The notes beneath the pieces are model-generated. The model was not told the origin of the DNA and did not search any database. It saw only the letters and a program-made list of their open reading frames with translations. Shown here piece by piece: positions 1,076 to 59,783 of a stretch of 64,000 nt of DNA (its first letter is position 1; each line of letters opens with the position of its first letter). The stretch covers positions 1-64,000 of the IMG/VR virus record IMGVR_UViG_3300023202_000247, one strand, 5' to 3'. The position numbers and the translations under genes are program-made.

Positions 1076-1103
1076 TTGACGCGGCGGAACGCGTGATTAG
1101 GTT
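1076..1103 (+). promoter_or_regulatory. Putative sigma70-type promoter (TTGACG ... TAGGTT) at the start of the structured non-coding region
   Basis: TTGACG, 16-bp spacer, TAGGTT; resembles the promoter-like sequence at 57922-57950 (shared TTGACGC and CGTGATTAG). Confidence 0.45.
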
Positions 1104-1104
1104 C

Positions 1105-26647: not shown

Positions 26648-27354
26648 GCGATAGAAACAAGCGTATCGTTGAATCGATGCAAGAGATGTTGTCCAACCAT
26701 GTGCTTATACGTGAGCATGTGTGGAATGATGACAAGCAGGCAAGCTGGGTGCTGGCTCGTGAGGGTCCGAGCGAACCCATCGAGGTAATTGCTGGCGTTG
26801 GAAATACCATCCTGATTCATGGCAACTGGCCGTTGATTCGGCTATGCTGTGAGGGTGGCAGCTGCTTCGAACGGCTCATGTGTGTAGCACATGCACGAGC
26901 CGATAAGCTCATGACGTATGCATCGTTGGGTGGTACCGAGTATGATGCTTACAATGCGAGCGAAGCAGCTGAAAAGCTCATGGAACTACGCGGTGATTAC
27001 AACGCTGATCATCAGTATGATCTTGGCAAGTTGATGGATGAAGCTATCAATCATGTTGAGATTGAAACGTCATTGTACGATTACCTACATCATAACAACT
27101 ACAGCTTCGAGCACGATACTTTTCGAGTAGTTCATGATAATCTGATTCAAGGTCAGGTAATCCTGAATCACTTGGTCAAGATATTGATTCGTCATCGTGA
27201 AGATGGTCCAGCTATTGAACATGCAGATGGATATAAATCTTGGTGGATAAATGGTACCAAACTGACAGAAGAAGAGTTTAACAATCGTTACTCATCTTGT
27301 ACCAGCAAGATTGTAGAGATTGACGGAAAACGTTACAAACTAGAAGAGGTTTGA
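26644..27354 (+). CDS. Chimeric protein: unrelated N-terminus fused to the HREDGPA-family C-terminus
   Basis: Switch at about 27190 (LIR|HREDGPA...KRYKLEEV). Confidence 0.8.
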   Translation: MSDRNKRIVESMQEMLSNHVLIREHVWNDDKQASWVLAREGPSEPIEVIAGVGNTILIHGNWPLIRLCCEGGSCFERLMCVAHARADKLMTYASLGGTEYDAYNASEAAEKLMELRGDYNADHQYDLGKLMDEAINHVEIETSLYDYLHHNNYSFEHDTFRVVHDNLIQGQVILNHLVKILIRHREDGPAIEHADGYKSWWINGTKLTEEEFNNRYSSCTSKIVEIDGKRYKLEEV

Positions 27355-27357
27355 AAA

Positions 27358-27864
27358 ATGGAAAAACTTCGAGTAGAGATTAATGATTGTGGTGACAAAA
27401 GGTATTACAAGTGGAATACGTATGAACTGCATAATCCATATGGTCCAGCAATTGAATTTGCATATGGATCTAAATCTTGGTATCTAAACGGTAAACTTCA
27501 TCGTGAAGATGGTCCAGCAATTGAATGGACAGATGGACATAAAGAGTGGTGGATAAACGGTAAAGTTCATCGTGAGGATGGTCCAGCAATTGAACATGTA
27601 GATGGAGCTAAAGAGTGGTGGATAAACGGTAAACGTCACCGAGAAGATGGCCCAGCTGTTGAATACGCAAATGGATCTAAATTTTGGTATGTAAACAGTA
27701 AACGTCATCGTGAAGATGGTCCAGCAATTGAATGGGCAGATGGACATAAAGAGTGGTATCTAAACGGTGTCGAATTGACAGAAAAAGAGTTCAACAATCG
27801 TCACTCTTGCGCTGGTAAAGTTGTAGAGATTGACGGAAAACGTTACAAGCTAGAAGAGGTTTGA
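27358..27864 (+). CDS. HREDGPA 23-aa-repeat protein, 5 units
   Basis: Conserved MEKLRVEI N-cap and VEIDGKRYKLEEV C-cap. Confidence 0.92.
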   Translation: MEKLRVEINDCGDKRYYKWNTYELHNPYGPAIEFAYGSKSWYLNGKLHREDGPAIEWTDGHKEWWINGKVHREDGPAIEHVDGAKEWWINGKRHREDGPAVEYANGSKFWYVNSKRHREDGPAIEWADGHKEWYLNGVELTEKEFNNRHSCAGKVVEIDGKRYKLEEV

Positions 27865-27867
27865 AAA

Positions 27868-28236
27868 ATGGAAAAGCTTCGAGTAGAGATTAAAGATTGT
27901 GGTACCAAGAGATACTACAAGTGGGATACGGATGAACTGCATAATCCGTATGGTCCAGCTGTTGAATATGCAGATGGAGATAAAGTTTGGTATCTAAACG
28001 GTAAACGTCATCGTGAAGATGGTCCAGCTGTTGAAGATGCAGATGGAGATAAATCTTGGTGGATAAACGGTAAACGTCACCGAGAAGATGGTCCAGCAAT
28101 TGAATATGCAGATGGAGATAAAGAATGGTGGGTAAACGGTGTCGAATTGACAGAAAAAGAGTTTCACAATCGTCACTCTTGTACCAGCAAGATTGTAGAG
28201 ATTGATGGAAAACGTTACAAACTAGAAGAGGTTTGA
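27868..28236 (+). CDS. HREDGPA repeat protein, 3 units
   Basis: Paralog of 27358. Confidence 0.92.
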   Translation: MEKLRVEIKDCGTKRYYKWDTDELHNPYGPAVEYADGDKVWYLNGKRHREDGPAVEDADGDKSWWINGKRHREDGPAIEYADGDKEWWVNGVELTEKEFHNRHSCTSKIVEIDGKRYKLEEV

Positions 28237-28239
28237 AAA

Positions 28240-28677
28240 ATGGAAAAACTTCGAGTAGAGATTGACCATCATGGTAACAATAGATACTACAAGTGGGATA
28301 CGGATGAACTGCATAATCCATATGGTCCAGCTGTTGAATATGCAGATGGAGATAAAGTTTGGTATCTAAACGGTAAACGTCATCGTGAAGCTGGTCCAGC
28401 TGTTGAATGGGAAGATGGAGATAAAGAGTGGTGGATAAATGGTAAACGTCACCGAGAAAATGGTCCAGCAATTGAACATGTAGATGGATCTAAATTTTGG
28501 TATATAAACAATAAACTTCATCGTGAAGATGGTCCAGCAATTGAATATGCAGATGGAGATAAAGAATGGTGGGTAAACGGTGTCGAATTGACAGAAAAAG
28601 AGTTTCACAATCGTCACTCTTATGCTGGCAAAGTTGTAGAGATTGACGGAAAACGTTACAAACTAGAAGAGGTTTGA
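28240..28677 (+). CDS. HREDGPA repeat protein, 4 units
   Basis: Paralog of 27358. Confidence 0.92.
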   Translation: MEKLRVEIDHHGNNRYYKWDTDELHNPYGPAVEYADGDKVWYLNGKRHREAGPAVEWEDGDKEWWINGKRHRENGPAIEHVDGSKFWYINNKLHREDGPAIEYADGDKEWWVNGVELTEKEFHNRHSYAGKVVEIDGKRYKLEEV

Positions 28678-28680
28678 AAT

Positions 28681-28980
28681 ATGGAAAAGCTTCGAGTAGA
28701 GATTAATGATTGTGGTGACAAGAGGTATTACAAGTGGGATACGGATGAGTATCATAATCCATATGGTCCTGCTATTGAACGTGCAAATGGAACTAAATGT
28801 TGGTATGTAAACGATAAGCGTCATCGTGAAGATGGCCCTGCTATTGAATTTGCAAATGGACATAAAGAGTGGTATCTAAACGGTGTCGAATTGACAGAAA
28901 AAGAGTTCAACAATCGTCACTATTGCGCTGGTAAAGTTGTAGAGATTGACGGAAAACGCTATAAACTAGAAGAGGTTTGA
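28681..28980 (+). CDS. HREDGPA repeat protein, 2 units
   Basis: Paralog of 27358. Confidence 0.92.
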   Translation: MEKLRVEINDCGDKRYYKWDTDEYHNPYGPAIERANGTKCWYVNDKRHREDGPAIEFANGHKEWYLNGVELTEKEFNNRHYCAGKVVEIDGKRYKLEEV

Positions 28981-32451: not shown

Positions 32452-32487
32452 GTAACAAAGAATGCTGTGCTCCTAAAAGTCACAGAC
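32452..32487 (+). CRISPR. Solitary CRISPR repeat, type B (GTAACAAAGAATGCTGTGCTCCTAAAAGTCACAGAC)
   Basis: 36 bp; aligns without gaps to the array repeat at 44040; stem CTGTG/CACAG. Confidence 0.85.
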
Positions 32488-34253: not shown

Positions 34254-34358
34254 TCTGAGTAGCTTGCAGGTTTTCATTTGATTACATTACCTGATAGTGT
34301 TTTTAACATGGGTAGTTATCATAAAAGGTAATTATGGTGGCAGCCCGCGCTCATAATT

Positions 34359-34392
34359 TTACAAGGATGCTGTGCTCCTAAAAGTCAAGAGC
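34359..34392 (+). CRISPR. Solitary type B repeat with a degenerate 3' end
   Basis: TTACAAGGATGCTGTGCTCCTAAAAGTCAAGAGC, 32 nt upstream of ORF 34425. Confidence 0.75.
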
Positions 34393-38573: not shown

Positions 38574-39359
38574 ATGGAAAAGTTACGAGTAGAGATTAAT
38601 TGTCGTGGTAACAAGATGTATTACAAGTGGGATACGGATGAACTGCATAATCCGTATGGTCCAGCTGTTGAATACGCAAATGGAACTAAATATTGGTATC
38701 TAAACGGTAAACATCACAGAGATGATGGCCCAGCTGTTGAATATGCAAATGGAGCTAAAGAGTGGTGGATAAACGATAAGCGTCATCGTGAGGATGGTCC
38801 AGCTGTTGAAGGTGCAAATGGACATAAAGAGTGGTATCTAAACAATAAACTTCATCGTGAAGATGGTCCAGCTGTTGAAGGTGCAAATGGACATAAAGAT
38901 TGGTATCTAAATAGTAAACGTCACCGAGAAGATGGTCCAGCTGTTGAATATGCAAATGGATATAAATCTTGGTGGATAAATGGTAAACGTCACCGAGAAG
39001 ATGGTCCAGCTATTGAATATGCAGATGGATATAAAGATTGGTATGTAAACGGCAAGCTTCATCGTGAAAATGGTCCAGCTGTTGAATTTGCAAATGGACA
39101 TAAAGAATGGTATCTAAACGGTAAACTTCATCGTAAAGATGGTCCAGCAATTGAAAATGCAAATGGACGTAAAGAGTGGTGGGTAAACGGAAAGCTTCAT
39201 CGTGAGGATGGTCCAGCTGTTGAATATGCAAATGGAGATAAATGTTGGTATGTAAATGGTACCAAACTGACAGAAGAAGAGTTCAACAGTCGTCACTCAT
39301 CTTGTACCAGCAAGATTGTTAAGATTGACGGAAAACGCTACAAGTTAGAAGAGATTTGA
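38574..39359 (+). CDS. HREDGPA repeat protein, 9 units
   Basis: Same caps and 23-aa period as array 1. Confidence 0.92.
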   Translation: MEKLRVEINCRGNKMYYKWDTDELHNPYGPAVEYANGTKYWYLNGKHHRDDGPAVEYANGAKEWWINDKRHREDGPAVEGANGHKEWYLNNKLHREDGPAVEGANGHKDWYLNSKRHREDGPAVEYANGYKSWWINGKRHREDGPAIEYADGYKDWYVNGKLHRENGPAVEFANGHKEWYLNGKLHRKDGPAIENANGRKEWWVNGKLHREDGPAVEYANGDKCWYVNGTKLTEEEFNSRHSSCTSKIVKIDGKRYKLEEI

Positions 39360-39802
39360 AAATGGAAAAGATAAGATTAGAGATTAATTGTCGTGGTGAC
39401 AAGAAGTATTACAAGTGGGATACGGATGAGTATCATAATCCATATGGTCCAGCTGTTGAATACGAAAATGGAGATAAATATTGGTATTTAAACGATAAGT
39501 GTCACCGAGAAGATGGTCCAGCTGTTGAACATGCAGATGGGCGTAAAGCTTGGTATCTAAACGGAAATCGTCACCGAGAAGATGGTCCAGCTGTTGAATA
39601 TACAAGTGGGGATAAAGAGTGGTGGGTAAATGGGGTACTTCACCGAGAAGATGGTCCGGCAATTGAAGGTGCAGATGGACGTAAATCTTGGTATGTAAAC
39701 GGTACCAAACTGACAAAAGAAGAATTCAACAGTCGTCACTCATCTTGTACCAGCAAGATTGTGGAGATTGACGGAAAACGTTACAAGCTAGAAGAAGTTT
39801 GA
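39356..39802 (+). CDS. HREDGPA repeat protein, 4 units
   Basis: Paralog. Confidence 0.92.
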   Translation: MKMEKIRLEINCRGDKKYYKWDTDEYHNPYGPAVEYENGDKYWYLNDKCHREDGPAVEHADGRKAWYLNGNRHREDGPAVEYTSGDKEWWVNGVLHREDGPAIEGADGRKSWYVNGTKLTKEEFNSRHSSCTSKIVEIDGKRYKLEEV

Positions 39803-40314
39803 GCATGGAAAAGCTAAGATTAGAGATTGACTGTGATGGTACAAAAAAGTATTACAAGTGGGATATGGATGAACTGCATAATCCATATGGTCCAGCTGTT
39901 GAATACGAAAATGGAGATAAATATTGGTATCTAAACGATAAGCTTCACCGAGAAGATGGTCCAGCTGTTGAACATGCAGATGGAAATAAATCTTGGTATC
40001 TAAACGGTAAACTTCATCGTGAGGGTGGTCCAGCTGTTGAAAATGCAAATGGAGATAAAGAGTGGTGGGTAAACGTAAAGCTTCATCGTGAGGATGGTCC
40101 AGCAGTTGAACATGTAGATGGATCTAAATTTTGGTATGTAAACAACAAGCTTCACCGAGATGATGGTCCAGCTGTTGAATATGCAAATGGAACTAAATGT
40201 TGGTATGTAAACGGTACCAAACTGACAAAAGAAGAATTCAACAGTCGTCACTCATCTTGTACCAGCAAGATTGTGGAGATTGACGGAAAACGTTACAAGC
40301 TAGAAGAGATTTGA
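39799..40314 (+). CDS. HREDGPA repeat protein, 5 units
   Basis: Paralog. Confidence 0.92.
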   Translation: MSMEKLRLEIDCDGTKKYYKWDMDELHNPYGPAVEYENGDKYWYLNDKLHREDGPAVEHADGNKSWYLNGKLHREGGPAVENANGDKEWWVNVKLHREDGPAVEHVDGSKFWYVNNKLHRDDGPAVEYANGTKCWYVNGTKLTKEEFNSRHSSCTSKIVEIDGKRYKLEEI

Positions 40315-40685
40315 AAATGGAAAAGCTAAGATTAGAGATTAATTGTCGTGGTGACAAGAAGTATTACAAGTGGGATACGTGTGAACTGCATAATCCATAT
40401 GGTCCAGCAATTGAATTTGCTGGAGATAAATATTGGTATCTAAACGATAAGTGTCATCGAAAAGATGGTCCAGCAATTGAATTTGTAAATGGAACCAAAT
40501 CTTGGTGGATAAACAATAAACTTCATCGGGAAGATGGTCCAGCAATTGAATGGGCAAATGGATCTAAATATTGGTATGTAAACGGTGTCGAATTGACAGA
40601 GGCAGAGTTCAACAATCGTCACTCATCTTGTGCTGGTAAAGTTGTAGAAATTGACGGAAAACGTTACAAACTAGAAGAGATTTGA
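40311..40685 (+). CDS. HREDGPA repeat protein, 3 units
   Basis: Paralog. Confidence 0.92.
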   Translation: MKMEKLRLEINCRGDKKYYKWDTCELHNPYGPAIEFAGDKYWYLNDKCHRKDGPAIEFVNGTKSWWINNKLHREDGPAIEWANGSKYWYVNGVELTEAEFNNRHSSCAGKVVEIDGKRYKLEEI

Positions 40686-41254
40686 AAATGGAAAAGCTAA
40701 GATTAGAGATTAACCATCATGGTGACAAGAGGTATTACAAGTGGGATACGGATGAACTGCATAATCCGTATGGTCCATCTGTTGAATACAAAAATGGATC
40801 TAAATATTGGTATGTAAACGGCAAGCTTCATCGTGAAAATGGTCCAGCTATTGAATTTGCAAGTGGGCGTAAAGATTGGTATGTAAACGGCAAGCTTCAT
40901 CGTGAAAATAGTCCAGCTATTGAATTTGCAAATGGACATAAAGAATGGTATGTAAACGGTAAACTTCATCGTGAAGATGGTCCAGCACCGGCTGACTCAA
41001 TCACGAGCTGGAACATTCGGGAAGATGATGGTTCGAATCCATCACGGCCGGTCATGCACAAATTGCATAAATTGTTAATATCATTGTGGTTTTTGATGCT
41101 CGTACTCATATGTGTGGGTGACCATGTGTATGAGTATCACGAGTGTAAAAGTATCGAGCAGCGTAGTAAGTTCTCCGTGATAAACGGATGTGAAGTAAAT
41201 GTGGGTGGAACGTGGGTTCCACGGCAAGCGTGGGGTGGTGATAAAAATGAATGA
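40682..41254 (+). CDS. Chimeric ORF: HREDGPA N-terminal part read through into a 66-aa membrane-protein ORF (ATG 41054)
   Basis: Repeat breaks at GPA|PADS (about 40987); MHKLHKLLISLWFL... follows. Confidence 0.7.
   Translation: MKMEKLRLEINHHGDKRYYKWDTDELHNPYGPSVEYKNGSKYWYVNGKLHRENGPAIEFASGRKDWYVNGKLHRENSPAIEFANGHKEWYVNGKLHREDGPAPADSITSWNIREDDGSNPSRPVMHKLHKLLISLWFLMLVLICVGDHVYEYHECKSIEQRSKFSVINGCEVNVGGTWVPRQAWGGDKNE
40986..41054 (+). tRNA. Degenerate tRNA-like element (not a functional tRNA call)
   Basis: GATGG-TTCGAAT-CCATC T-arm, ACCGGC/GCCGGT acceptor-like stem, CTC-AATCAC-GAG D-arm-like; no credible anticodon arm or CCA. Confidence 0.35.
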
Positions 41255-41370: not shown

Positions 41371-41916
41371 ATGCATACGGACAAGATTGTTGATTATATC
41401 AACAGCCGTTTGATAAGTATTCAAAAGAAGTACAACTTTCCTCCGAACGTCAAGTTGCGTGACGTTCCAGATAATAAAGATGCAATAAAACATTATCATC
41501 AATTCAAAGAATTGGTGAGGTTAATTGAAAAAACGAATCTCGACGTTGATATTCCGTATGACGAGAGTGGTGAGTCGCCCACAGAAAAGTTTGTGAAGCT
41601 CACTCAACGTGATGTATTCGTTTACTTCTGCCAAGAAGGCTTCTCCACAACTTGGAAGATTGGATACTCAACCCAATCATTTCGAAGAATAAAAGCAGTG
41701 CAGACTGGCAATCCGAACGATTTGCACTTGCGCTATGAGGTGCCTGGTTCCTTTGACCTAGAGCAAAGCCTTCATAGGTATCTGAAGAACTTTAGAATCA
41801 AGGGTCGGTCGAAGGAGTGGTTCGACCTTGACCCTGCAATGGTTGAGAACATTGTTAAACGCCTGAAAAATGGCGAAGATTTTTATACACAAAAGGCTTT
41901 GAAAAATGAAACGTAA
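41371..41916 (+). CDS. GIY-YIG (T5orf172/MUG113-like) domain protein
   Basis: VYFCQEG...WKIGYS...IKAVQTGNP...LEQSLHRYL...EWF. Confidence 0.85.
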   Translation: MHTDKIVDYINSRLISIQKKYNFPPNVKLRDVPDNKDAIKHYHQFKELVRLIEKTNLDVDIPYDESGESPTEKFVKLTQRDVFVYFCQEGFSTTWKIGYSTQSFRRIKAVQTGNPNDLHLRYEVPGSFDLEQSLHRYLKNFRIKGRSKEWFDLDPAMVENIVKRLKNGEDFYTQKALKNET

Positions 41917-43921
41917 GACTTCATCGTTGCCTACGCGAATTTACACATATGGCATCGTAAGTATGGATACAGATAGTCATAGCATCATCATGGAGCAGTT
42001 GTTCGAAGGCAACAAAGTTCGTAATCAACTTGTTGCTCTCGAGCGTGAGCGACGCGCAAAGTTTCGCACGCTTCGCTCCGAGGTTGCTCCGCAGCTCGCT
42101 GTTCTCGAGATGGAAAAAGACGGTATCGTATCCCTATACGATGATGCACTTGTCCAGTTGAAGAAGCTCAAGCGTACTGAGCGTGATGGTTCGGCAGAGC
42201 TTGATGTTTTGAATGGTGTGAAAAAGAAACTAGCCATAGTCAAAGAACGTCTGAAGAAGATGCGGCAAGAGGTTGATGACGAGCACTTCAAGCCTGGTAA
42301 AATCGCTTTCAAGAAAGAGTACAAGAAAAGGGTTGAAGATTACAAGGCTCAAGATGAAAACGGTAACTGCGGGCCACATATCCAAGCACGTATCAAAAAA
42401 GAATTGCGTGAAGAGTTTCGTGCCGATTGCAAGTACTCTAGTTGGTTGAAGAGTGACGAGATTCAGGAGTGGTTCGAGTCAGAGTTCAAGCGCATCAAGA
42501 ATGAGAGTCCTTGTTACCCTGGTACCAAGGCTGCTGTATCTGATGCAGCTATGAAGTCATTTAGTGACTCTATGGTTGATCCAGCATTCAAACCTTTTGA
42601 TGGTGGTCGAGTCGAGCGTCAGCTGTTAGAGGCGGTAAAAGGAAAGTATATTGCTGCCATTCCAGAACGAATCATGTCTGGAGAGCTACGTAACATTTGC
42701 ATCACGCCGGTAATGCCAAAACTCAGCAATGGTGGAGAATATCAGGCAAAAATCAGATTGGCCAATGATGTTTACGTAACTGTAAACTTCATCATGCATC
42801 GACCATTGCCTCAAGACTCGTCCGCAAAGTTTGTTCGCGTTCTCGCAAAACGAGTTGGAAATCATTTCAAGTTCGAGTTACAATTTGTAATCGAGTTTGA
42901 TTTGCCCGATCGTCAAACTACTGATAGCTTGATTGCTCTCGACATTGGTTGGCGAGTGCTAGATGATGGTAGTTTCTTGGTTGCTACGTCATGGGATGGT
43001 AAAGAAACGAAACAGTTGAAGTTGCCATCCGAACTTGCAAGTATCAACGCACGATGTGTAGAGCTTCTTGGTTATGCTGATAAGCATCTTGATAATATCA
43101 AGGTGTTTGCTGGTGAACACAAGGAAGACATTGCCAAGGTAATTGGTGATCGTATGGATCTTTCACACATTCACAAGTGGCGCTCGTCAAAAAAGATGCG
43201 CAAACTAACAAACATCTTTGTGCAAGATGTACTTGATGAGCGTGTCCATGAACTATGGAGGTCTTGGAAAAAGCATCGTGGGTTCAACAAAACTAAGGGT
43301 CAAACTTGGTCTCAGTGGAGGGCTTTGCGAAAGACACCACCAAAGGATCTGTATGATAAGCCAGACATCATCTTTGCGTGGGCATCTAGCCTTGATTTGA
43401 GTAATGATGAGTGCATTGCTGTGTGTTTGGAATGGTGGCGTCGTAAGGATATTCACCTGACTGACTATGCACGGAATACTCAGCATCGTTTGTTCTTGCG
43501 TCGTCGCGAAATCTTCCGAGTTTTTGCAAGTCAGATTGCTAAAAAGTATGATACTTTGGTAATTGCAAAGCTCAATCGCTCCAAGCTAGCAGAAAAGCCC
43601 AAGGCGGATAAGGACCGACGTACCAAGCATGACGAGAACACAAATAGTGTGCGTCAGTTTGTTGGGCCTTCCATTCTAGTACAAGCATGTAAGGAAGCGT
43701 TCCGAGGCTCCGTTGTGGAGCTTTCTGGCGTGAAGAATCTTCATCACAACTGTGGAGGCAAGCCTAAGACTGAACACAAGATTCAAAATGTCTTGTGTGG
43801 TAAGTGTGAAAAAATGTTTAACCATGATTTGAATTACGCAAAGGTATTGTATCATCGCGGTAGCGAGCGGTCCGGTGGTGCCGCAGGTACCGGCAGCGCT
43901 CGTAAAAGTGCAAGTGCGTGA
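41906..43921 (+). CDS. cas12m: Type V CRISPR effector, Cas12m (V-M, formerly V-U1)-like, probably DNase-inactive
   Basis: RIYTYG N-terminus, MHRPLP, RuvC-I LDIGWR, RuvC-II position LVIAKLN without an acidic residue, CGKC zinc ribbon, RuvC-III HDLNYA; immediately followed by leader and repeats. Confidence 0.8.
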   Translation: MKRKTSSLPTRIYTYGIVSMDTDSHSIIMEQLFEGNKVRNQLVALERERRAKFRTLRSEVAPQLAVLEMEKDGIVSLYDDALVQLKKLKRTERDGSAELDVLNGVKKKLAIVKERLKKMRQEVDDEHFKPGKIAFKKEYKKRVEDYKAQDENGNCGPHIQARIKKELREEFRADCKYSSWLKSDEIQEWFESEFKRIKNESPCYPGTKAAVSDAAMKSFSDSMVDPAFKPFDGGRVERQLLEAVKGKYIAAIPERIMSGELRNICITPVMPKLSNGGEYQAKIRLANDVYVTVNFIMHRPLPQDSSAKFVRVLAKRVGNHFKFELQFVIEFDLPDRQTTDSLIALDIGWRVLDDGSFLVATSWDGKETKQLKLPSELASINARCVELLGYADKHLDNIKVFAGEHKEDIAKVIGDRMDLSHIHKWRSSKKMRKLTNIFVQDVLDERVHELWRSWKKHRGFNKTKGQTWSQWRALRKTPPKDLYDKPDIIFAWASSLDLSNDECIAVCLEWWRRKDIHLTDYARNTQHRLFLRRREIFRVFASQIAKKYDTLVIAKLNRSKLAEKPKADKDRRTKHDENTNSVRQFVGPSILVQACKEAFRGSVVELSGVKNLHHNCGGKPKTEHKIQNVLCGKCEKMFNHDLNYAKVLYHRGSERSGGAAGTGSARKSASA

Positions 43922-44039: not shown

Positions 44040-44183
44040 GTAACAAAGGATGCTACGCTCCTTAAAGTTGTAGACGATTGGTTGGGAGTGGAGTCGCTAC
44101 GTCGAGCCAGGTAACAAAGGATGCTACGCTCCTTAAAGTCACAGACAAACTCAAAGAATGCTGTGCTCCTAAAAGTCACAGAC
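44040..44183 (+). CRISPR. Mini-array 1: type A repeat, 35-nt spacer, A/B hybrid repeat (44111-44146), type B repeat (44148-44183)
   Basis: Direct inspection. Confidence 0.9.
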
Positions 44184-44213
44184 AAAAGAATAACGAAACG
44201 GAAAGAGTAAAGA

Positions 44214-44519
44214 ATGAAGAAGAGTAACGAAACGAATTTTTCATCAGCATATTTCCACATTTACAATGGTGGAATGTCAATTTCTATCGTCAAAATATCT
44301 GAAGGTGATACCTTAGAATTTAGATTGAGAATTGCAAACTCAATTTTCGGAGCAGCGTTTAGTCATGAATTTCCGTTGCCTCCACCAAAGGGGTTGCGTT
44401 GGATTGCAAAATCCTTTGAAAGTTTGGCTGATTATATAGAGAAAGAATCAGCCAATGGTCATAACAGTATTTCTCCATTTGAGACCATCCAGATAAATGG
44501 TAGCGAATCTAAGCTTTAA
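44214..44519 (+). CDS. Hypothetical protein, 101 aa, embedded in the CRISPR locus
   Basis: ATG 30 nt after a type B repeat; stop just before leader copy 2. Confidence 0.7.
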   Translation: MKKSNETNFSSAYFHIYNGGMSISIVKISEGDTLEFRLRIANSIFGAAFSHEFPLPPPKGLRWIAKSFESLADYIEKESANGHNSISPFETIQINGSESKL

Positions 44520-44525
44520 AGGACT

Positions 44526-44686
44526 CTCGCAAAAGTGCAAGTGCGTGATTTCATTGCAATCGGAGACAGCATGCCCCTAAAGATGTAGACTGAAAAAATA
44601 ATTTTGCAAGTTGTTATAATAATAATCTGCAACCACTCGCAAAACAACCCGTAACCATTTGAAATCATTGATGATTTCAAATGGGG
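44526..44686 (+). promoter_or_regulatory. CRISPR leader copy 2
   Basis: Near-identical to leader 1 with a 20-nt insertion; TGTTATAAT at 44612-44620. Confidence 0.8.
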
Positions 44687-45377
44687 GTAACAAAGGATGC
44701 TACGCTCCTTAAAGTTGTAGACGACGATAGCCGCTGCAGTGTGCACTGAATACGCAAGTAACAAAGGATGCTACGCTCCTTAAAGTTGTAGACAAATCGC
44801 CCGGCCAGACAGGGAGCTGGCGAAGTTGGTCGAGCCGGTGTAACAAAGGATGCTACCCTCCTTAAAGTTGTAGACTATTCTTACAATGTGCATCTGAGCA
44901 TTATTTACAAGTAACAAAGGATGCTACGCTCCTTAAAGTTGTAGATTAGGACTGATTGTGGTGAAGCAGAAAGAAGGTAACAAAGGATGCTACGCTCCTT
45001 AAAGTTGTAGACTAGACAGCTCGCCGAGCGATCCGAAGTTGGTCGAGCCGGTGTAACAAAGGATGCTACCCTCCTTAAAGTTGTAGACTATTCTTACAAT
45101 GTGCATCTGAGCATTATTTACAAGTAACAAAGGATGCTACGCTCCTTAAAGTTGTAGATTAGGACTGATTGTGGTGAAGCAGAAAGAAGGTAACAAAGGA
45201 TGCTACGCTCCTTAAAGTTGTAGACTAGACCGCGGCACCGCGTGTGACGCTCCTCATGTAATAAAGGATGCTACGCTCCTTAAAGTTGTAGACAGGGGAC
45301 GAGCCGTGAGCGGCTCGTAATAAAGGATGTAGACAGCCACAGCCATAGCCAATGGATGCCACGCTCCTTAAAGTTGT
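44687..45377 (+). CRISPR. Main array, repeat GTAACAAAGGATGCTACGCTCCTTAAAGTTGTAGAC
   Basis: Full repeats at 44687, 44758, 44840, 44911, 44977, 45053, 45124, 45190, 45258; degenerate repeats at 45317 and about 45354; spacers 23-46 nt. Confidence 0.97.
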
Positions 45378-54678: not shown

Positions 54679-55497
54679 ATGTCCCGCATCAATGAGTATG
54701 TAGGTCCGAAAGAGAGCGTCCGCAAGGACGCTCTTTTTCGTTATACCTCTGACAAATGGCTTGCCCAAGAAAAGCATGATGGTGTTTGGGCATTGATTTC
54801 AACCGATGAGTATGGCAAGATTGAATCCATCATATCTCGTACGGGTTTGCAGCATCCCGACGAGTACACACGTGGATTCATCGGTCTCGGTATCGGACTC
54901 ACATCTAGCAAGCTCGTTGCAGAGCTAGAGGCCGGAACGCAAGCTGCAACGAAACGTTTCAAGCGTAATGGTTATCGTAAGATTTGGTTCTTTGATGTCA
55001 TTCAGTTGCTCGGAAAAGATATTCATGAGCTAAGCCTGGAACAACGTCTTCACCTACTAAAGAGAGCATTACCATCTTCTCGAAACTTTTCCATCGTAAG
55101 AACTTCAAACTCTAACCTAGAGCAGTTCTATGACGAAGTTATGGCTGCCGGTGGTGAAGGAATCGTTCTCAAACAAAAAGATAGCAAGTACATTTCCGAA
55201 TATTCCAGTGGTAAAACCACCAAGTGGGTGCGCTGTAAACCTACGAATACACTGGACTTTTTCGTCATGGGTACTGGGTTGACGGAAAGTCGTGTACCGA
55301 ATTTGGAGCTTGGCCTTTACAAGAATGGTAAGCTGTGTTATGTTCAGTCGCTCACGGTCCCGAAGGGTTATCGAGCGAAGGAGCTGGTTGGCAAGGTAAT
55401 CGAGTGTGTCGGAGACGTGCAGATGGACTCGGGAGCGCTGAGACATGCACGTTTCAAAAGAGTGAGAAATGACAAAAATCCCGAAGCATGCACGTAG
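54679..55497 (+). CDS. lig: Minimal ATP-dependent DNA ligase
   Basis: Motif I QEKHDG, motif IV EGIVLK, motif V region KWVRCKP, C-terminal OB fold. Confidence 0.9.
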   Translation: MSRINEYVGPKESVRKDALFRYTSDKWLAQEKHDGVWALISTDEYGKIESIISRTGLQHPDEYTRGFIGLGIGLTSSKLVAELEAGTQAATKRFKRNGYRKIWFFDVIQLLGKDIHELSLEQRLHLLKRALPSSRNFSIVRTSNSNLEQFYDEVMAAGGEGIVLKQKDSKYISEYSSGKTTKWVRCKPTNTLDFFVMGTGLTESRVPNLELGLYKNGKLCYVQSLTVPKGYRAKELVGKVIECVGDVQMDSGALRHARFKRVRNDKNPEACT

Positions 55498-55741
55498 TTT
55501 GATTGTTACATATGAGTCGACACGTGCTCTTGGTCTTCCATGGAATCCATTGGCAGCCAGACGTGCACAAATGCAAGTCTGCGATGCTGTGGATAGTATG
55601 CGAAAGTATCAAAGCTTGCTCAATTCTAACGAAGAATTCGTAAAAGTTTGGGCAGTTCAAAAAGAACTTATTGATCGATACGTAGTTGAACTCCAACTAA
55701 TCAAAGATCCAAAGGTAGAGTTGAAAAATGAAAAGTACTAA
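55469..55741 (+). CDS. Hypothetical protein, 90 aa
   Basis: Overlaps lig and ku. Confidence 0.65.
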   Translation: MTKIPKHARSLIVTYESTRALGLPWNPLAARRAQMQVCDAVDSMRKYQSLLNSNEEFVKVWAVQKELIDRYVVELQLIKDPKVELKNEKY

Positions 55742-56597
55742 GAAGAGTGGTGCTCCGCGTGCAACTGGTAGTGCGGTCATTTCGTTCGGAATGGTTTCCA
55801 TTCCCGTCAAGCTGTATACTTCTACGAAAGATGAGAGTGTTCGTTTTAACATGATCAACCCTGCAACGCACAATCGTTGCAAGCAGAAGATTGTGGATGC
55901 GGTGACCGAGGAAGAGGTTAATCGCAACGAAACTCTCAAAGGTTTCGAGTATCAGAAAGATAACATCGTTACCTTCACCAAAGAAGAATTGGAAAAGCTC
56001 TCGGCATCTCAAGACAAGATGGTTGAGATTACCGAGTTCGTCAACAGCGATGACATCGATCCTGTTTACTTCTCCAAGAGTTACTATCTTGGTGCAGACA
56101 AGGGTGGAGATAAGCCTTACGCATTGCTGACCGAGGTAATGCGACGCACTGGTCGCGTAGCTATTGGTCGCTGGTATACTCGTGGCCAGGGACGATTGGT
56201 TCTGCTTGCACCATACGGTGAAGGATTGATTCTTCACCAGCTATGGTATGCTAATGAGGTTCGAGGCTGTGAGCACATTGCTCCAGAAGCTACGGTTTCT
56301 GAACAAGAAATTGCTCTTGCTGAGAAGCTTGTGGCCACGCTTGCCAGTGATGAGTTCGATGCAACCAAGTATCGTGACGAGTATGGTGACCGTGTGCGTG
56401 AGAGTGCGGAGTTGAAGGCTGCTGGTGGTGAGATTGCAACCCCGCAGGTCGAGAACAAAACCAATGTTACCGACCTGTTTGCTGCTCTCAACGCTAGTCT
56501 CGATAAGGTTGAGACCAAGGAAACGAAGGCAACTAAGAAAAAGGCTGCAAAGAAGACCGCACGTAAGCGCTCAACGAAAAAGAAGGCTTCGTCATAA
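55728..56597 (+). CDS. ku: Ku (NHEJ DNA end-binding) protein
   Basis: ISFGMVSIPVKLY, IDPVYFSKSYYL, DKPYALL, basic C-terminal tail. Confidence 0.95.
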   Translation: MKSTKKSGAPRATGSAVISFGMVSIPVKLYTSTKDESVRFNMINPATHNRCKQKIVDAVTEEEVNRNETLKGFEYQKDNIVTFTKEELEKLSASQDKMVEITEFVNSDDIDPVYFSKSYYLGADKGGDKPYALLTEVMRRTGRVAIGRWYTRGQGRLVLLAPYGEGLILHQLWYANEVRGCEHIAPEATVSEQEIALAEKLVATLASDEFDATKYRDEYGDRVRESAELKAAGGEIATPQVENKTNVTDLFAALNASLDKVETKETKATKKKAAKKTARKRSTKKKASS

Positions 56598-57071: not shown

Positions 57072-57482
57072 GTGAATCTAAACTTTAAATTCTCCGAAGA
57101 CATTGAAGAGGAGAATAGAGGTTTTATTTGTCATAAGCTCTCGGTCGTAGCAAACGACCGAGAGCTTGGCTATATCAAAGTAAGCTACATTCCAAGCTCA
57201 GTTTACAGAACGTGCTATGCATCTGCGCTCGATTATGCAGTTAAGCATGCTGGTTGGCATATGGATGATAGATTCTACGACCTTGCGACTGTTTCCTATT
57301 CGAGAGTATATGAAGAGTTTCAACGAAAAGGTATTGCTACAGCTATGTATCTTGAGATGGCCCGACAGCTCAAGAAAAGGTACTATATCAAGCTAAGAGC
57401 TAGTGCTCTTTGGGAATCCTTCAAAGAAAAGGGCTTGACAAAAACCTGGGAAGGATTTACAATACTGAATCCTTTAGAATAA
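57072..57482 (+). CDS. GNAT-like acetyltransferase
   Basis: VYEEFQRKGIATAMY acetyl-CoA motif A. Confidence 0.65.
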   Translation: MNLNFKFSEDIEEENRGFICHKLSVVANDRELGYIKVSYIPSSVYRTCYASALDYAVKHAGWHMDDRFYDLATVSYSRVYEEFQRKGIATAMYLEMARQLKKRYYIKLRASALWESFKEKGLTKTWEGFTILNPLE

Positions 57483-57492
57483 GGAGAGTCGA

Positions 57493-57792
57493 ATGCTTCC
57501 GGACGAACAAAGACTGCTAGATTTCTTCAACAACAAGTCAAAACCATTCGACCCAGCGTCTGATGGGCCGACCATTGGTCATCCAAATGGATACAATCCG
57601 AAAGATATTTGTCTAGCATCTGATCAATGGTTGGAGGAGTCTCACGATTAGTGGGCCTTTCCTTTGCCGGAAAGGTCGACGTTTAACCCGTCGGCTCCGG
57701 TTCTCACCGAGACTTGCGTTGCTTTGATCAACCGCAATTCGCTTTACAGCATGTTTGATCGGATGATGCAGTTTTACTTTCGGAACACTTAG
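57493..57792 (+). pseudogene. OGFr-N-like (opioid growth factor receptor conserved region) pseudogene
   Basis: DQWLEESHD*WAFPLPERSTFNPSAPVLT resembles WLE..HDYIQWLFPL.E.S.FNP.APVLT; in-frame TAG at 57649. Confidence 0.6.
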
Positions 57793-57882
57793 GTCACAGA
57801 CAAGTATCGTAGTTAGATGGAGCCTCAGTGGTAACGCAGAACGTGAGACGAGGCTGTCACTGCATTTGATCTACGAAGAATT

Positions 57883-57992
57883 TTTACAAAGGATGCTGTG
57901 CTCCTAAAAGTCACAGACGGCTTGACGCCGCCAGAATTCGTGATTAGCATGATGTTTCATCACAAAGGATGCTGTGCTCCTAAGTCACAGAC
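57883..57992 (+). CRISPR. Mini-array of two type B repeats (57883-57918, about 57958-57992) around a spacer of about 40 nt
   Basis: Direct inspection; the second repeat has a 2-nt deletion in the loop; a further 3'-end remnant GTCACAGAC lies at 57793-57801. Confidence 0.85.
57922..57950 (+). promoter_or_regulatory. sigma70-type promoter occupying the mini-array spacer
   Basis: TTGACG, exactly 17 bp, TAGCAT; predicted start site about 57957, at the 5' end of the second repeat. Confidence 0.65.
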
Positions 57993-58049
57993 GCTCATCG
58001 AAACAACGGACCCCTGTAACCTTCTCGAAAACAAGAAAGACCTGGAAAA

Positions 58050-58556
58050 ATGAGTAACCAAACCAAGCAAGCCTACACTTCGCATGACGCCGCCAAGATC
58101 CTGGGTGTGAGCAATAGCTCCGTGCTCAAGTGGATTGACGACGAAAAGCTCGCAGCCTACCGTACCCCTGGTGGTCACCGGCGCATCAAGCCCGAGGATC
58201 TTCGTGCGTTCGCTGCCGAGTATGAGATGCCGTTTGCTGCCGGCGACGCTGGCGAGGGCAAGGTATTCTTCCTGGGCAAGCGTCTGCCCAAGAGCCTGAA
58301 GGATTACGACACCCAGAAGTTCTCGCCGAGTGACATGGTCAAAACGATCGTGGCCATCGCTTCCGAGAAGCCTGCGGTTGTCGTGCAGGCCGAGGGTGAC
58401 AATGCCGAGAGCGTACTCGAGGCAATTCAGGAGAGCAGTGCGGGTTCCCGCTACGTTCTCGTGGCCGAGGAGAACGAGGAGAACGCGGCCCTGCTCAAGA
58501 GCGTGAAGAAGCTCGGCGGCGAGGTTGTGGCCTCTCTGAAGGATCTCGAGCTGTAA
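58050..58556 (+). CDS. Excisionase-type HTH (HTH_17/MerR-like) regulator with a degenerate receiver-like C-terminus
   Basis: YTSHDAAKILGVSNSSVLKWID...AYRTPGGHRRI. Confidence 0.85.
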   Translation: MSNQTKQAYTSHDAAKILGVSNSSVLKWIDDEKLAAYRTPGGHRRIKPEDLRAFAAEYEMPFAAGDAGEGKVFFLGKRLPKSLKDYDTQKFSPSDMVKTIVAIASEKPAVVVQAEGDNAESVLEAIQESSAGSRYVLVAEENEENAALLKSVKKLGGEVVASLKDLEL

Positions 58557-58582: not shown

Positions 58583-58611
58583 CATCCCGCATGCATAATG
58601 CATGCGGGATG
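58583..58611 (+). terminator. 14-bp perfect hairpin
   Basis: CATCCCGCATGCAT-A-ATGCATGCGGGATG. Confidence 0.7.
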
Positions 58612-59783
58612 CTCGCGTTTATACGTTGGTACATTTTATGTATCAACATATGAGCATGAGCGTGTTCACGTCCAAAAACCCAATTGAAAATATCGAAACA
58701 ATATTTTGTGAGAAAGGAGCGTATGAATACCCATTGACCAAAATCATTTTGGACAGGTACTCAAAAGCAAATGTTATCGACGTTGATTCTCACAATAACA
58801 TACCAGATGTTTATGACGACCCAGATAACGTCAAATATTGGAACAAGATAAAAGCTCATACACTAGTGCTTGGCATCAAGAAAAGTGTTAGTGCTAGGCC
58901 CAATTGCAGAAGTACTGATTGGATTGCGCCAAGCTTCTCAAATGGATGTGCGCTGGCCTGTTCGTATTGCTATGTTGTGCGACGAAAAGGATATGCAAAC
59001 CCAATTACATTGTTTGTAAACGTCGAACGCATCAAGAAATATTTGCGCGGCCATAGTAAGCGCCGAGGTCCAAAGGTTTTGACACCGGAAAATGCTCAAA
59101 CGGACACGATTTACTGGACATATGATATAGGCGAGAATTGTGATGTGAGCGTTGATGCTTTGCTAAGCGATACGCCTCGCGAGATTGTTCAGTTCTTTCG
59201 CGATGAGATGCCTCACGGCAAAGCCTCGTTTGCAACCAAGTATGTTAACCGTAGCATGCTTGATTATGATCCCGGAAGAAAAACGAGAATCAGATTTTCT
59301 ATGATGCCTCAAAAACCTTCCAAGGTTGTTGATGTACGCACGTCTTCGATTAAAGATCGTATTAATGCAATTAATGATTTTCACCGCGCCGGCTACGAAG
59401 TTCATTTAAACTTTTCTCCTGTCATCATCTACGACGGTTGGGAAAGGGATTACGTGGAGTTGTTTGAGCAAATCAATGACTGCACAAACAATGCTGTAAA
59501 GAAACAGCTCAAGTGTGAGGTCATTTTTCTTACCCATAATGAAAAGCTTCATGAGTTAAACATGAAGTGGCATCCCAAAGCTGAGCGTGAGTACCTGTAT
59601 AGGTATAAAAATGTTGATGGTAAGAATAAGTTTGGGCTCCCCGTGTTACAACAACGTAAGTTGAGCCAAAACGGTATGTGGAATTTGAGATATAAAAATA
59701 ATCACAAGAAAGCTGGTGTACAGACTTTTCGTGATTTGCTCGATTCTCATATGGGCTACTGTAACATACGTTACATTTTTTAG
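58602..59783 (+). CDS. splB: Spore photoproduct lyase-family radical SAM protein (start probably a downstream Met)
   Basis: NGCALACSYCY CxxxCxxC motif, YDIGENCD, FATKYVN, RIRFSMMP. Confidence 0.85.
   Translation: MRDARVYTLVHFMYQHMSMSVFTSKNPIENIETIFCEKGAYEYPLTKIILDRYSKANVIDVDSHNNIPDVYDDPDNVKYWNKIKAHTLVLGIKKSVSARPNCRSTDWIAPSFSNGCALACSYCYVVRRKGYANPITLFVNVERIKKYLRGHSKRRGPKVLTPENAQTDTIYWTYDIGENCDVSVDALLSDTPREIVQFFRDEMPHGKASFATKYVNRSMLDYDPGRKTRIRFSMMPQKPSKVVDVRTSSIKDRINAINDFHRAGYEVHLNFSPVIIYDGWERDYVELFEQINDCTNNAVKKQLKCEVIFLTHNEKLHELNMKWHPKAEREYLYRYKNVDGKNKFGLPVLQQRKLSQNGMWNLRYKNNHKKAGVQTFRDLLDSHMGYCNIRYIF

What the first reader, a model, noticed from the sequence alone, without database searches (positions are those of the whole stretch)
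57883..58050. A mini-array whose spacer is a promoter, directly upstream of an HTH regulator
Seen: between two B repeats lies TTGACG-17 bp-TAGCAT, so transcription would begin at the 5' end of the second repeat. That gives an mRNA for the HTH gene (58050) that opens with a crRNA-like handle. If the first repeat is transcribed from upstream, its guide would be a promoter sequence partly matching the promoter-like site at 1076 (TTGACGC...GAA...CGTGATTAG). Inference: a regulatory circuit linking Cas12m to a transcription factor, possibly with a guide aimed at a phage promoter class.
Basis: partly seen in the sequence, partly recalled or inferred. Interest (0 to 1): 0.8.

Follow-up and report, generated by a model that had tools for sequence, protein, structure and literature searches.

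The report
Solo Cas12m repeats pasted beside PAM sites
The "mini-array" is two stray copies of a phage CRISPR repeat pasted into a decaying gene pair in front of a regulator gene; its "spacer" is a leftover piece of those genes, not a captured promoter, and across this phage family such stray repeats sit exactly where repeat-less relatives carry a Cas12m recognition motif, so they may turn the phage's own sequence into guides against rival phages.

Summary
The window is the left end of a 321-kb phage with a Cas12m-like gene and arrays.

The interpretation mostly fails:
- **Promoter:** it scores 9/12, which is chance level.
- **Match to 1076:** 23% of shuffled spacers match some site in the genome as well.
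- **Spacer origin:** repeat-less relatives show the "spacer" is native DNA. It holds the last 8 codons and stop of an OGFr_N-family gene (now a pseudogene, 57493-57947) plus the start of a lost ORF. R1 and R2 replace about 175 and 430 nt of those genes.

B-type repeats are a dispersed, plus-strand, intergenic family (about 16 copies including degenerate ones), and most lie 12-80 nt upstream of a start codon. In 8 of 9 junctions that could be compared with a repeat-less allele, the native sequence after the repeat is preceded there by TTG or TTT (P about 1e-8). This is the 5'-TTN PAM of Cas12m2.

My best reading is that each repeat plus its flank is an in-situ crRNA aimed at repeat-less relatives. 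The carrier is spared because the repeat has replaced its PAM. No RNA data or experiment supports this yet.

The parts
57435..57463 (+). Strong sigma-70-like promoter, TTGACA-17-TACAAT (11/12), ahead of the OGFr_N pseudogene. It is the likeliest source of transcripts through the repeats and the HTH gene.
   Evidence: No convincing terminator lies between it and 58050.
57493..57789 (+). 5' 300 nt of an OGFr_N-family gene, now a pseudogene. It has an in-frame TAG at 57649-57651 with a 6-nt deletion. Homology to the intact gene of relative L015 stops at 57789.
   Evidence: tblastn of the L015 OGFr_N protein, E=2e-46. DNA alignment.
57790..57801 (+). Degenerate 3' end of a B repeat (CTTAGGTCACAGAC).
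57802..57882 (+). 81-nt unit starting AAGTATCGTAG. A second copy lies at genome 72568-72648, in which the last 34 nt are inverted. Function unknown.
57883..57918 (+). B repeat R1, 36 nt, with an intact stem (CTGTG/CACAG).
57919..57958 (+). The 40-nt 'spacer'. Positions 57921-57947 are the last 8 codons plus stop of the OGFr_N gene (LDAARIRD*). Position 57949 onward is the ATG and first codons of the lost ORF-X. The TTGACG-17-TAGCAT site (57922-57950) lies inside it.
   Evidence: the 4 differences from L015 in the coding part are all synonymous or stop-to-stop..
57959..57992 (+). B repeat R2, 34 nt, loop shorter by AA. It stands where relatives carry about 430 nt of ORF-X.
57949..58053 (+). 34-codon upstream ORF made of the ORF-X start, R2 and the ORF-X tail (LIETTDPCNL, same frame as in L015). 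Its TGA overlaps the HTH ATG as ATGA.
58050..58556 (+). HTH_17 (excisionase/MerR-like) DNA-binding protein of 168 aa, 59% GC in a 41% GC genome. Distant relatives carry a receiver domain at the C-terminus.
41371..41916 (+). T5orf172/MUG113 (GIY-YIG-like) gene that overlaps the cas12m start by 11 nt. The same pairing occurs in relative L009.
41906..43921 (+). Cas12m-like effector of 671 aa. The RuvC-II acidic residue appears to be missing (VIAKLN).
44040..44183 (+). A repeat, 35-nt spacer, A/B hybrid repeat (44111-44146), then a B repeat (44148-44183) ahead of a 101-aa gene.
44687..45293 (+). Main A-type CRISPR array. Its spacer content differs between strains. One spacer matches the phage's own genome.
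32452..32487 (+). Solitary B repeat in an intergenic region.
34357..34392 (+). Solitary B repeat with a decayed 3' stem, 33 nt ahead of a 124-aa gene.
1076..1100 (+). The similarity is at chance level and there is no PAM.

Best explanation
What it is (shown): the locus is not an adaptation-built mini-array. It is an OGFr_N-family gene and a small zinc-finger ORF (ORF-X) upstream of the HTH_17 gene, and dispersed B-variant Cas12m-type repeats now occupy parts of both. R1, with its 81-nt upstream unit, replaces the middle of the OGFr_N gene. R2 replaces nearly all of ORF-X. The 40 nt between them is the surviving gene junction.

How it most likely works (inferred): the locus is transcribed from the promoter at 57435, or from any upstream promoter. 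Cas12m cuts the RNA within or just upstream of each repeat, as described for other Cas12m enzymes. It then keeps a handle followed by native sequence as guide. For R1 the guide is GGCTTGACGCC...; for R2 it is GCTCATCGAAAC..., which is the HTH 5' UTR.

In the carrier phage these sequences are preceded by the repeat end (..AGAC), so there is no PAM and no self-binding. In relatives without the repeat, the same sequences are preceded by TTT or TTG, so a binding-only Cas12m would sit on the 5' ends of the rival's genes. The dispersed repeats therefore act like omega-RNA ends of TnpB elements or like viral mini-arrays: guides against the 'empty' allele during co-infection.

How the repeats come to lie exactly at PAM|protospacer boundaries is open. 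It could be targeted insertion or recombination.
For: 1. Native origin of the spacer. The L015 OGFr_N protein matches window 57493 onward at E=2e-46. Homology breaks at 57790 and resumes at 57919 and again at 57993. The four differences in the coding remnant are synonymous or stop-to-stop. Two further relatives have the same repeat-less layout (gene table; X5 record 25).
2. A family, not a one-off. About 16 B-type copies, all on the plus strand and all intergenic, most 12-80 nt before a start codon. They also occur at other sites in relatives (L021 start, L023, X5 record 26).
3. PAM-precise right junctions. 8 of 9 repeat-less alleles have TTG or TTT immediately 5' of the sequence that follows the repeat. 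The TT background is 0.074-0.085, giving a binomial P of 8e-9 to 2e-8 (underlying alignments). One case is a clean 82-nt insertion between TTG and the target.
4. Cas12m2 uses a 5'-TTN PAM, a single crRNA with pseudoknot and stem, processes its own pre-crRNA and binds without cutting (PMC10442227; PMC11013384).
5. Repeat variants A, B and C keep the stem through compensatory changes at 3 of 5 pairs. 91% of cells pair, against 31-49% when the partner is slid.
6. The guides have no other match in the phage's own genome.
7. The first 10-11 nt after the junction are identical in the repeat-less allele in 6 of 7 cases, and 20/20 nt match in two.
Against: - There are no transcript data. No RNA run was listed, so neither transcription through the repeats nor processing is shown.
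- Whether this Cas12m accepts the B stem is untested. Only A repeats lie in its arrays, and the genome record is about 75% complete, so a cognate B-type array or effector could be missing.
- A second type V protein, Cas12f-like, lies 1 kb from a cluster of B units.
- Some copies are decayed (34357, 72131, 171961). R2 has a shortened loop and its target in L015 has 3 mismatches in 20 nt.
- One junction of nine has ATC rather than TTN.
- The census has only nine junctions, taken from four or five related lineages, and the junctions were placed by eye at the canonical repeat end.
- The only self-matching array spacer has ATC, not TTN, beside its target, so the PAM of this enzyme is not established directly.
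Confidence: 0.5

Rival explanations
1. The 40-nt interval is a working sigma-70 promoter that starts the HTH mRNA at the 5' end of R2. R1 plus the interval gives a guide that directs Cas12m to similar promoters such as the one at 1076, forming a Cas12m-transcription factor circuit.
For: - TTGACG-17-TAGCAT is present, and a start about 7 nt downstream would fall at R2.
- The hexamers are retained in relative L015 as TTGACG-17-TAAGAT.
- TTGACGC...CGTGATTAG occurs only twice in the genome.
- Both sites lie in GC-rich DNA.
Against: - The 9/12 score is at chance frequency.
- The hexamers are codons plus a stop and a start codon, so coding explains their conservation.
- In L015 the predicted start would lie inside ORF-X, past its ATG.
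- The 1076 match is reached by 23% of shuffles, has seed mismatches and an indel, and has TAC/ACC rather than TTN 5' of it.
- A much better promoter lies 460 nt upstream.
Confidence: 0.08
2. The repeats are cis-acting 5'-UTR elements for the phage's own genes. Cas12m binds or cleaves the repeat in the mRNA and so sets its 5' end, stability or translation. This would be a post-transcriptional regulon with no DNA targeting.
For: - The repeats are in sense orientation and 12-80 nt from start codons.
- Cas12m processes RNA at its repeat.
- For several copies the ribosome-binding site lies within the first 20 nt after the repeat. Examples are 72684 and 171996, with starts at +12 and +14.
Against: - This model does not explain why the junctions fall at TTN sites of repeat-less alleles.
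- The genes served have nothing in common.
- Relatives express the same genes without the element.
Confidence: 0.2
3. The repeats are functionless scars. Array fragments were pasted into the genome by recombination between array spacers (taken next to PAMs from related phages) and the homologous resident sequence, and are now decaying.
For: - The right junctions are PAM-precise while the left junctions are ragged, with deletions.
- The loci look like array fragments: doublets with a 37-nt period, A-like plus B, and an A/B hybrid.
- Several copies are degenerate.
- One array spacer matches the phage's own genome 35/35.
Against: - Eleven copies keep an intact stem and are nearly identical.
- All copies share the orientation of the genes.
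- The 129-nt R1 element is a copy of the one at 72556-72684, yet the sequence after that source repeat has no homology to the R1 target. Simple spacer-homology recombination from that source therefore does not work.
- An origin by this route would still leave functional guides.
Confidence: 0.17
4. The repeats are RNA decoys (anti-CRISPR RNAs). They soak up the Cas12m of a competing phage or host whose arrays use the B-type repeat.
For: - Related lineages carry Cas12m with different stem variants (L009, L020).
- Solitary repeats in viruses have been proposed to inhibit their cognate effectors (PMC10120712).
Against: - No array with B repeats was found in viral, metagenome or genome collections.
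- Decoy function gives no reason for PAM-precise junctions.
Confidence: 0.05

Closest known systems
Virus-borne mini-CRISPR arrays and solitary repeat units (discussed in PMC10120712; the primary papers are cited from my own knowledge)
   Same: CRISPR repeats lie outside a full array in a viral genome. They lack adaptation genes and are thought to act against closely related viruses or on effectors.
   Different: Here the sequences next to the repeats are not acquired spacers. They are the resident, colinear genome sequence. The repeats sit in 5' UTRs and number more than a dozen.
TnpB/IscB omega-RNA logic of IS200/IS605 elements (my own knowledge; Cas12m-TnpB kinship in PMC10442227)
   Same: An RNA scaffold at the end of an inserted element reads out into the flank, so the flank becomes the guide. 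The empty site carries the TAM/PAM directly before the target. The clean 82-nt insertion after TTG at 171.9 kb has exactly this geometry.
   Different: The scaffold is a 36-nt CRISPR repeat, not a 100-150-nt omega RNA. The effector is encoded elsewhere, next to a true array. The record holds no intact Y1 transposase, only an 83-aa fragment. Most events are replacements rather than simple insertions.
Regulatory mini-arrays and cr-like RNAs (CreTA, scaRNA, tracr-L, type I and V-A mini-arrays; PMC10120712)
   Same: A two-repeat unit lies outside the array, upstream of a cargo or regulator gene, in a system whose effector can silence transcription.
   Different: Those spacers pair partially with a nearby promoter that has a valid PAM. 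No such target exists here: 1076 fails and no other self-match was found.
Type V-M CRISPR-Cas12m (PMC10442227, PMC11013384) and the phage-encoded Cas12m of myxophage MV-1 (bioRxiv 10.64898/2026.09.14.751636)
   Same: The effector is a Cas12m homologue with an adjacent array and no tracrRNA. The repeat can form a pseudoknot plus stem. TTN is found next to the inferred targets. The system is phage-borne and lacks cas1/cas2.
   Different: The protein is 671 aa and only about 25% identical to characterised enzymes. It overlaps a T5orf172 nuclease-like gene. A second, dispersed repeat variant is present.
Free-standing homing endonuclease genes and mobile promoter-stem-loop cassettes of T4-type phages (my own knowledge)
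   Same: Small intergenic elements lie at synteny breakpoints, are present or absent between relatives, and are associated with gene loss or gain on one side.
   Different: No endonuclease is encoded in the element. Any specificity would come from RNA guides.

Membership tests
Type V-M CRISPR-Cas12m system | Effector homologous to Cas12m | tested here: met
   phmmer against PDB: 23vw_A Cas12m E=1.2e-24; 8pm4 and 23vu 1e-7; 8hhl 0.05.
Type V-M CRISPR-Cas12m system | Adjacent CRISPR array with spacer turnover | tested here: met
   Arrays at 44040-44146 and 44687-45293. Strain L006 carries 8 further spacers.
Type V-M CRISPR-Cas12m system | Single crRNA with no tracrRNA or anti-repeat | tested here: met
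   The best anti-repeat alignments in the genome score 23-27, which is the level of the shuffled 40-nt controls.
Type V-M CRISPR-Cas12m system | Repeat folds into a pseudoknot plus stem | tested here: met
   91% of cells pair in the proposed two-helix structure, against 31-49% when slid. Compensatory changes occur at 3 of 5 stem pairs. The sample is small: 7 sequences.
Type V-M CRISPR-Cas12m system | 5'-TTN (T/C-rich) PAM | tested here: inconclusive
   Indirect only. TTG or TTT stands beside 8 of 9 inferred targets. The one array spacer with a known match has ATC beside it.
Type V-M CRISPR-Cas12m system | Binds DNA without cleaving it | not testable with these tools
   The alignment places A/K where the RuvC-II glutamate should be. 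This is suggestive only.
CRISPR mini-array (repeat-spacer-repeat made by adaptation) | Two repeats separated by 20-60 nt | tested here: met
   R1 and R2 are 40 nt apart.
CRISPR mini-array (repeat-spacer-repeat made by adaptation) | Spacer is foreign or acquired, not colinear resident sequence | tested here: not met
   The spacer is the OGFr_N 3' end plus the ORF-X start. It keeps its native order between the OGFr_N 5' part and the HTH 5' UTR.
Regulatory cr-like RNA (spacer partly matches a promoter that has a PAM) | Partial match with intact seed and a valid PAM at a promoter | tested here: not met
   The 1076 site is a chance-level match with seed mismatches and no TTN. No other self-match was found.
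Sigma-70 promoter | -35 and -10 hexamers with 16-18 nt spacing, more frequent than chance | tested here: inconclusive
   9/12 match. The scan found 3 sites against 2.8 expected in the 2-kb region.
Sigma-70 promoter | Transcription start about 7 nt downstream | not testable with these tools
   No RNA run was listed.
IS200/IS605-type element with TnpB-like guide | Insertion directly 3' of the TAM, with the flank serving as guide | tested here: met
   Clean 82-nt insertion after TTG at genome 171914-171996 compared with L019. 8 of 9 junctions fit overall.
IS200/IS605-type element with TnpB-like guide | Y1 (HUH) transposase available | tested here: not met
   Only an 83-aa fragment at 220092-220343 that lacks the C-terminal part of the Y1_Tnp domain. 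The record is about 75% complete.

The most novel reading that the evidence does not exclude
The dispersed repeats are guide-only selfish or competitive elements. Each is a CRISPR repeat placed exactly between a PAM and its protospacer, which converts resident DNA into a guide against every genome that lacks the insertion. Cas12m, possibly working with the overlapping T5orf172 (GIY-YIG-like) nuclease, would then silence or cut the empty allele during co-infection. The repeat and its linked genes would be favoured or copied across. This would be an RNA-guided analogue of homing-endonuclease marker exclusion, and a living intermediate between TnpB omega-RNA ends and CRISPR arrays.
Probability: 0.2. 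Interest if true: 0.9.

Novelty: new variant of a known kind. Interest (0 to 1): 0.66.

Why it matters
As written, the finding (a promoter captured as a spacer, wiring Cas12m to a regulator) does not hold up, and that is worth knowing.

What lies beneath it is less ordinary. A huge phage with a binding-only type V-M effector carries more than a dozen solitary repeats. Their junctions with resident sequence coincide with PAM sites in repeat-less relatives.

If these repeats act as guides, phages can make anti-rival guides without an adaptation machinery, simply by where a repeat lands. The geometry also matches that of TnpB omega RNAs, which bears on how CRISPR arrays arose from transposon ends. 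The idea can be tested directly with small-RNA sequencing, binding assays and co-infection experiments.

Tried and rejected
- **Relatives in public collections.** I searched viral, metagenome and genome collections by the B repeat, by a degenerate A/B/L009 repeat pattern, and by the Cas12m, HTH and Cas12f-like proteins. Nothing turned up, or only two chance hits inside coding sequence. BLAST of the array and the locus against phage records also found nothing. The useful relatives came only from exact-protein look-ups of cluster members.
- **RNA evidence.** No RNA run was listed. The one read-laying run used DNA contigs only.
- **tracrRNA or anti-repeat for A or B repeats.** None scored above chance. 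I therefore set aside the idea that the AAGTATCGTAG units are tracr-like partners of the Cas12f-like protein. An 11-nt complement at genome 71944 remains unexplained.
- **TTGACGC shared by the sequences after R1 and after the repeat at 117068.** About one shared 7-mer is expected among the 14 downstream windows, so I dropped this.
- **TAG recoding.** TAG appears at a Tyr position in the OGFr_N gene and in tandem-repeat consensus units. I rejected recoding because none of the 54 MORN units has an in-frame TAG and the record has only a tRNA-Met.
- **Source of the HTH gene or its promoter.** Homologues share only the HTH domain, at about 50% identity.
- **Rfam.** No match in the window or in the structured left end.
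- **A 26%-identical Cas12m-like homologue (L024).** It has no repeats nearby and told me nothing.

Full report
**Setting**

The window is the first 64 kb of a 321,461-bp IMG/VR phage record with 40.6% GC, estimated about 75% complete.
- At 41906-43921 it encodes a 671-aa protein that matches solved Cas12m structures by sequence (23vw_A E=1.2e-24; 8pm4 and 23vu about 1e-7).
- That gene overlaps an upstream T5orf172/MUG113 gene by 11 nt.
- It is followed by A-type arrays, repeat GTAACAAAGGATGCTACGCTCCTTAAAGTTGTAGAC, at 44040-44146 and 44687-45293.
- Strain variants of the phage differ in spacer content, so the arrays are real.

**Observation**

The two B repeats, the 40-nt interval, the TTGACG-17-TAGCAT motif and the HTH_17 gene at 58050 are all present as described.

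B differs from A mainly in the stem: CTGTG/CACAG in B against CTACG/TGTAG in A. A third variant in a strain (L020: CCACG/TGTGG) and the cut-off repeat of an 86%-identical Cas12m locus (L009) follow the same pattern. On an alignment of seven repeat variants, a pseudoknot-plus-stem structure pairs 91% of cells, against 31-49% when the partner is slid. Three of the five stem pairs show compensatory changes. That matches the published Cas12m2 crRNA architecture (PMC10442227).

The promoter and the 1076 match do not stand up statistically:
- The site scores 9/12, the minimum the scan reports. The scan found three such sites in the 2-kb region against 2.8 expected.
- A much stronger promoter, TTGACA-17-TACAAT (11/12), lies at 57435.
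- The composite TTGACGC-N-CGTGATTAG is unique to 1076 and 57922. That is a post hoc motif, however: 231 of 1000 shuffled spacers find an equally long two-block match somewhere in the genome.
- The spacer's best local alignment elsewhere in the genome equals the shuffle mean.
- As a guide-target pair, the 1076 site has mismatches at positions 1 and 3, an indel, and no TTN.

**What the interval is**

The 90% cluster of the HTH protein led to a relative, L015. Its gene order is ligase, 90-aa gene, Ku, OGFr_N (169 aa), then an ORF-X-HTH open frame. It contains no B repeat.
- The L015 OGFr_N protein matches window 57493 onward at E=2e-46. The called 52-aa gene (57493-57651) and the 42-aa ORF (57664-57792) are two in-frame pieces of one gene, broken by a TAG and a 6-nt deletion.
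- DNA homology (about 80%) ends at 57789 and resumes exactly at 57919. It breaks again after the ORF-X start codon and resumes at 57993.
- Within the interval, 57921-57947 reads CTT GAC GCC GCC AGA ATT CGT GAT TAG, which is LDAARIRD-stop. L015 has CTT GAC GCT GCT AGA ATT CGT GAC TAA. All four differences are synonymous or stop-to-stop, the signature of sequence that was coding until recently.
- The next codons are the ATG of ORF-X.
- TTGACG is therefore codons Leu-Asp-Ala. TAGCAT is the stop codon, one base, and the first two bases of the next start codon.
- In L015 the same hexamers survive (TAAGAT). A start 7 nt downstream would lie inside ORF-X beyond its ATG, so the motif is not that gene's promoter there.
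- R1, with a degenerate repeat end and an 81-nt unit (57790-57918), replaces about 175 nt of the OGFr_N gene. R2 replaces about 430 nt of ORF-X.
- What remains of ORF-X is a 34-codon upstream ORF that keeps the original frame and overlaps the HTH start as ATGA.
- Two more relatives fit the repeat-less layout: the contig that carries P0032 (gene table only) and contig 25 of run X5.
- Close strains of this phage carry the repeats unchanged.

**The family**

B-type repeats occur at genome positions 32455, 34360, 44114 (A/B hybrid), 44151, 57886, 57962, 72134, 72290, 72652, 108139/108176, 108719/108756, 117036 (after an A-like copy at 116989) and 171964.
- All are on the plus strand and all are intergenic. 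Most lie 12-80 nt before a start codon.
- The downstream genes are unrelated to one another: the HTH, an intein-bearing RtcB, a transglycosylase and small ORFs.
- About eleven copies keep an intact stem. Others are decayed.
- Relatives carry B repeats at other sites (L021 start, L023, X5 contig 26). The family is therefore older than this phage and its positions turn over.

**The junction rule**

Wherever a repeat-bearing locus could be compared with a repeat-less allele, homology starts at the first base after the canonical repeat end. In the repeat-less genome that base is preceded by TTN in eight of nine cases.

| Junction (repeat-bearing genome) | Repeat-less allele | 3 nt before the target |
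|---|---|---|
| R1 (57918) | L015 | TTT |
| R2 (57992) | L015 | TTG |
| 171996 | L019 | TTG (clean 82-nt insertion, 20/20 match after the junction) |
| 108208 | L021 | TTG |
| 108788 | L021 | TTT |
| A-like 117021 | L016 | TTG |
| 117068 | L016 | ATC |
| X5's B repeat | this genome, 30962 | TTG |
| Strain L020's C-type repeat | this genome, 36715 | TTG (20/20 match) |

The alignments are, and the table is. With TT at 7-9% of positions, the binomial P is 8e-9 to 2e-8, and it is still 2e-5 at a generous 20% background.

The left junctions are irregular, and whole genes present in relatives are missing there. Cas12m2 needs a 5'-TTN PAM, uses a single self-processed crRNA, and silences by binding.

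**Mechanism proposed**

The shown steps are the native origin of the interval, the existence of the dispersed family, the conserved stem and the TTN rule.

The inferred steps are as follows:
1. The repeats are transcribed with their genes.
2. Cas12m processes the RNA and keeps a handle plus flank.
3. The flank guides it to repeat-less alleles in co-infecting relatives.
4. The carrier is exempt because ..AGAC has replaced the PAM.

The guides are sense-strand sequences at the 5' ends of genes, which I take to be a favourable place for a transcriptional roadblock. This geometry is that of a TnpB omega RNA reading out of a transposon end into a TAM-adjacent flank.

How the repeats reach such sites is unresolved. 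One route is recombination between array spacers and their resident homologues. The other is a targeted insertion process. The 129-nt R1 element is a copy of the one at 72556-72684, and the downstream sequence there has no homology to the R1 target. That argues against the simplest recombination route. No intact Y1 transposase is present.

**Rivals**
- A purely cis-acting 5'-UTR role fits the positions of the repeats but not the TTN rule.
- Functionless recombination scars fit the ragged left sides and the decayed copies. They fit less well with eleven intact, co-oriented copies.
- Decoy RNAs lack any known B-type array to act against.

**Limits**
- No RNA data were available.
- There are nine junctions, from a handful of related lineages.
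- The PAM of this particular enzyme has not been measured.
- Whether the enzyme accepts the B handle is untested.
- A quarter of the genome is unseen.
- A second type V protein, Cas12f-like with RuvC-I Asp replaced by Asn, lies next to a cluster of B units.

Noticed in passing
Outside the window: genome 69522-71003 (L001:5522-7003): A second type V effector of 493 aa, Cas12f-like (PDB 9nzq_A E=1e-18). Its RuvC-I Asp is replaced by Asn (VLNRG). It is followed by a 185-aa ORF, a CI-like HTH (98 aa), and then a 650-nt non-coding stretch holding 4-5 B-type units.
   Followed up: partly
window 44876-44910 and 45089-45123; target at genome 260161-260195 (minus strand): An A-array spacer matches the phage's own genome 35/35, inside a 682-aa gene. 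The 5' flank on the protospacer strand is ..TTTTATC. The spacer is kept in all three strains examined, and its repeat carries a G-to-C variant.
   Followed up: partly
window 57845-57878 versus genome 72611-72644 (L001:8611-8644): The 129-nt element ending in R1 is duplicated at 72556-72684. A 34-nt internal segment is inverted between the copies, with 2 substitutions. In the window copy the segment forms a 13-bp hairpin with the AAGTATCGTAG region; in the other copy it does not.
   Followed up: partly
window 46230, 57802; genome 72057, 72169, 72250, 72568, 79766: The motif AAGTATCGTAG, often followed by ..GCAGAAC, recurs in intergenic DNA, usually right after a repeat end. Its complement CTACGATAC lies at genome 71944. 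Its function is unknown.
   Followed up: partly
window 41371-41916 and L009:264-974: A T5orf172/MUG113 (GIY-YIG-like) gene overlaps the cas12m start in this phage and in the 86%-identical relative. This suggests a conserved nuclease-Cas12m operon.
   Followed up: no
window 44111-44686: An A/B hybrid repeat plus a B repeat precede a 101-aa gene. The gene is followed by a duplicate of the last ~30 nt of cas12m and the whole array leader. This looks like a gene cassette recombined into the array through the repeats.
   Followed up: partly
window 1-2700: An 80-bp tandem repeat (7.9 copies, 1-631) is followed by about 1.8 kb of ORF-poor, hairpin-rich DNA at 50% GC with no Rfam match. After that comes a 55-69% GC block up to about 13 kb, which holds ArdC-like and ChlI/ComM-like AAA genes.
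   Followed up: partly
genome 108135-108788 (L002:8135-8788): Two tandem B doublets (37-nt period) bracket a 153-aa gene. Relative L021 has three other genes at these two breakpoints.
   Followed up: yes
genome 117147-119549 (L002:17147-19549): RtcB is 800 aa here and 468 aa in relatives. The extra part has a weak LAGLIDADG match, so it is probably an intein.
   Followed up: no
genome 220092-220343: An 83-aa remnant of an IS200-type Y1 transposase. It keeps the HUH motif but the C-terminal part of the domain is missing. It sits among tail-fibre-like genes.
   Followed up: partly
window 54679-56597 and 58602-59783: The phage encodes an ATP-dependent DNA ligase and Ku (an end-joining pair) and a spore-photoproduct-lyase-like radical SAM enzyme, on either side of the locus.
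   Followed up: no
window 27190-28884 and 38656-40986; genome 73900-78740: Long runs of 23-residue MORN-like repeats (69-nt period) are spread over many adjacent genes.
   Followed up: no
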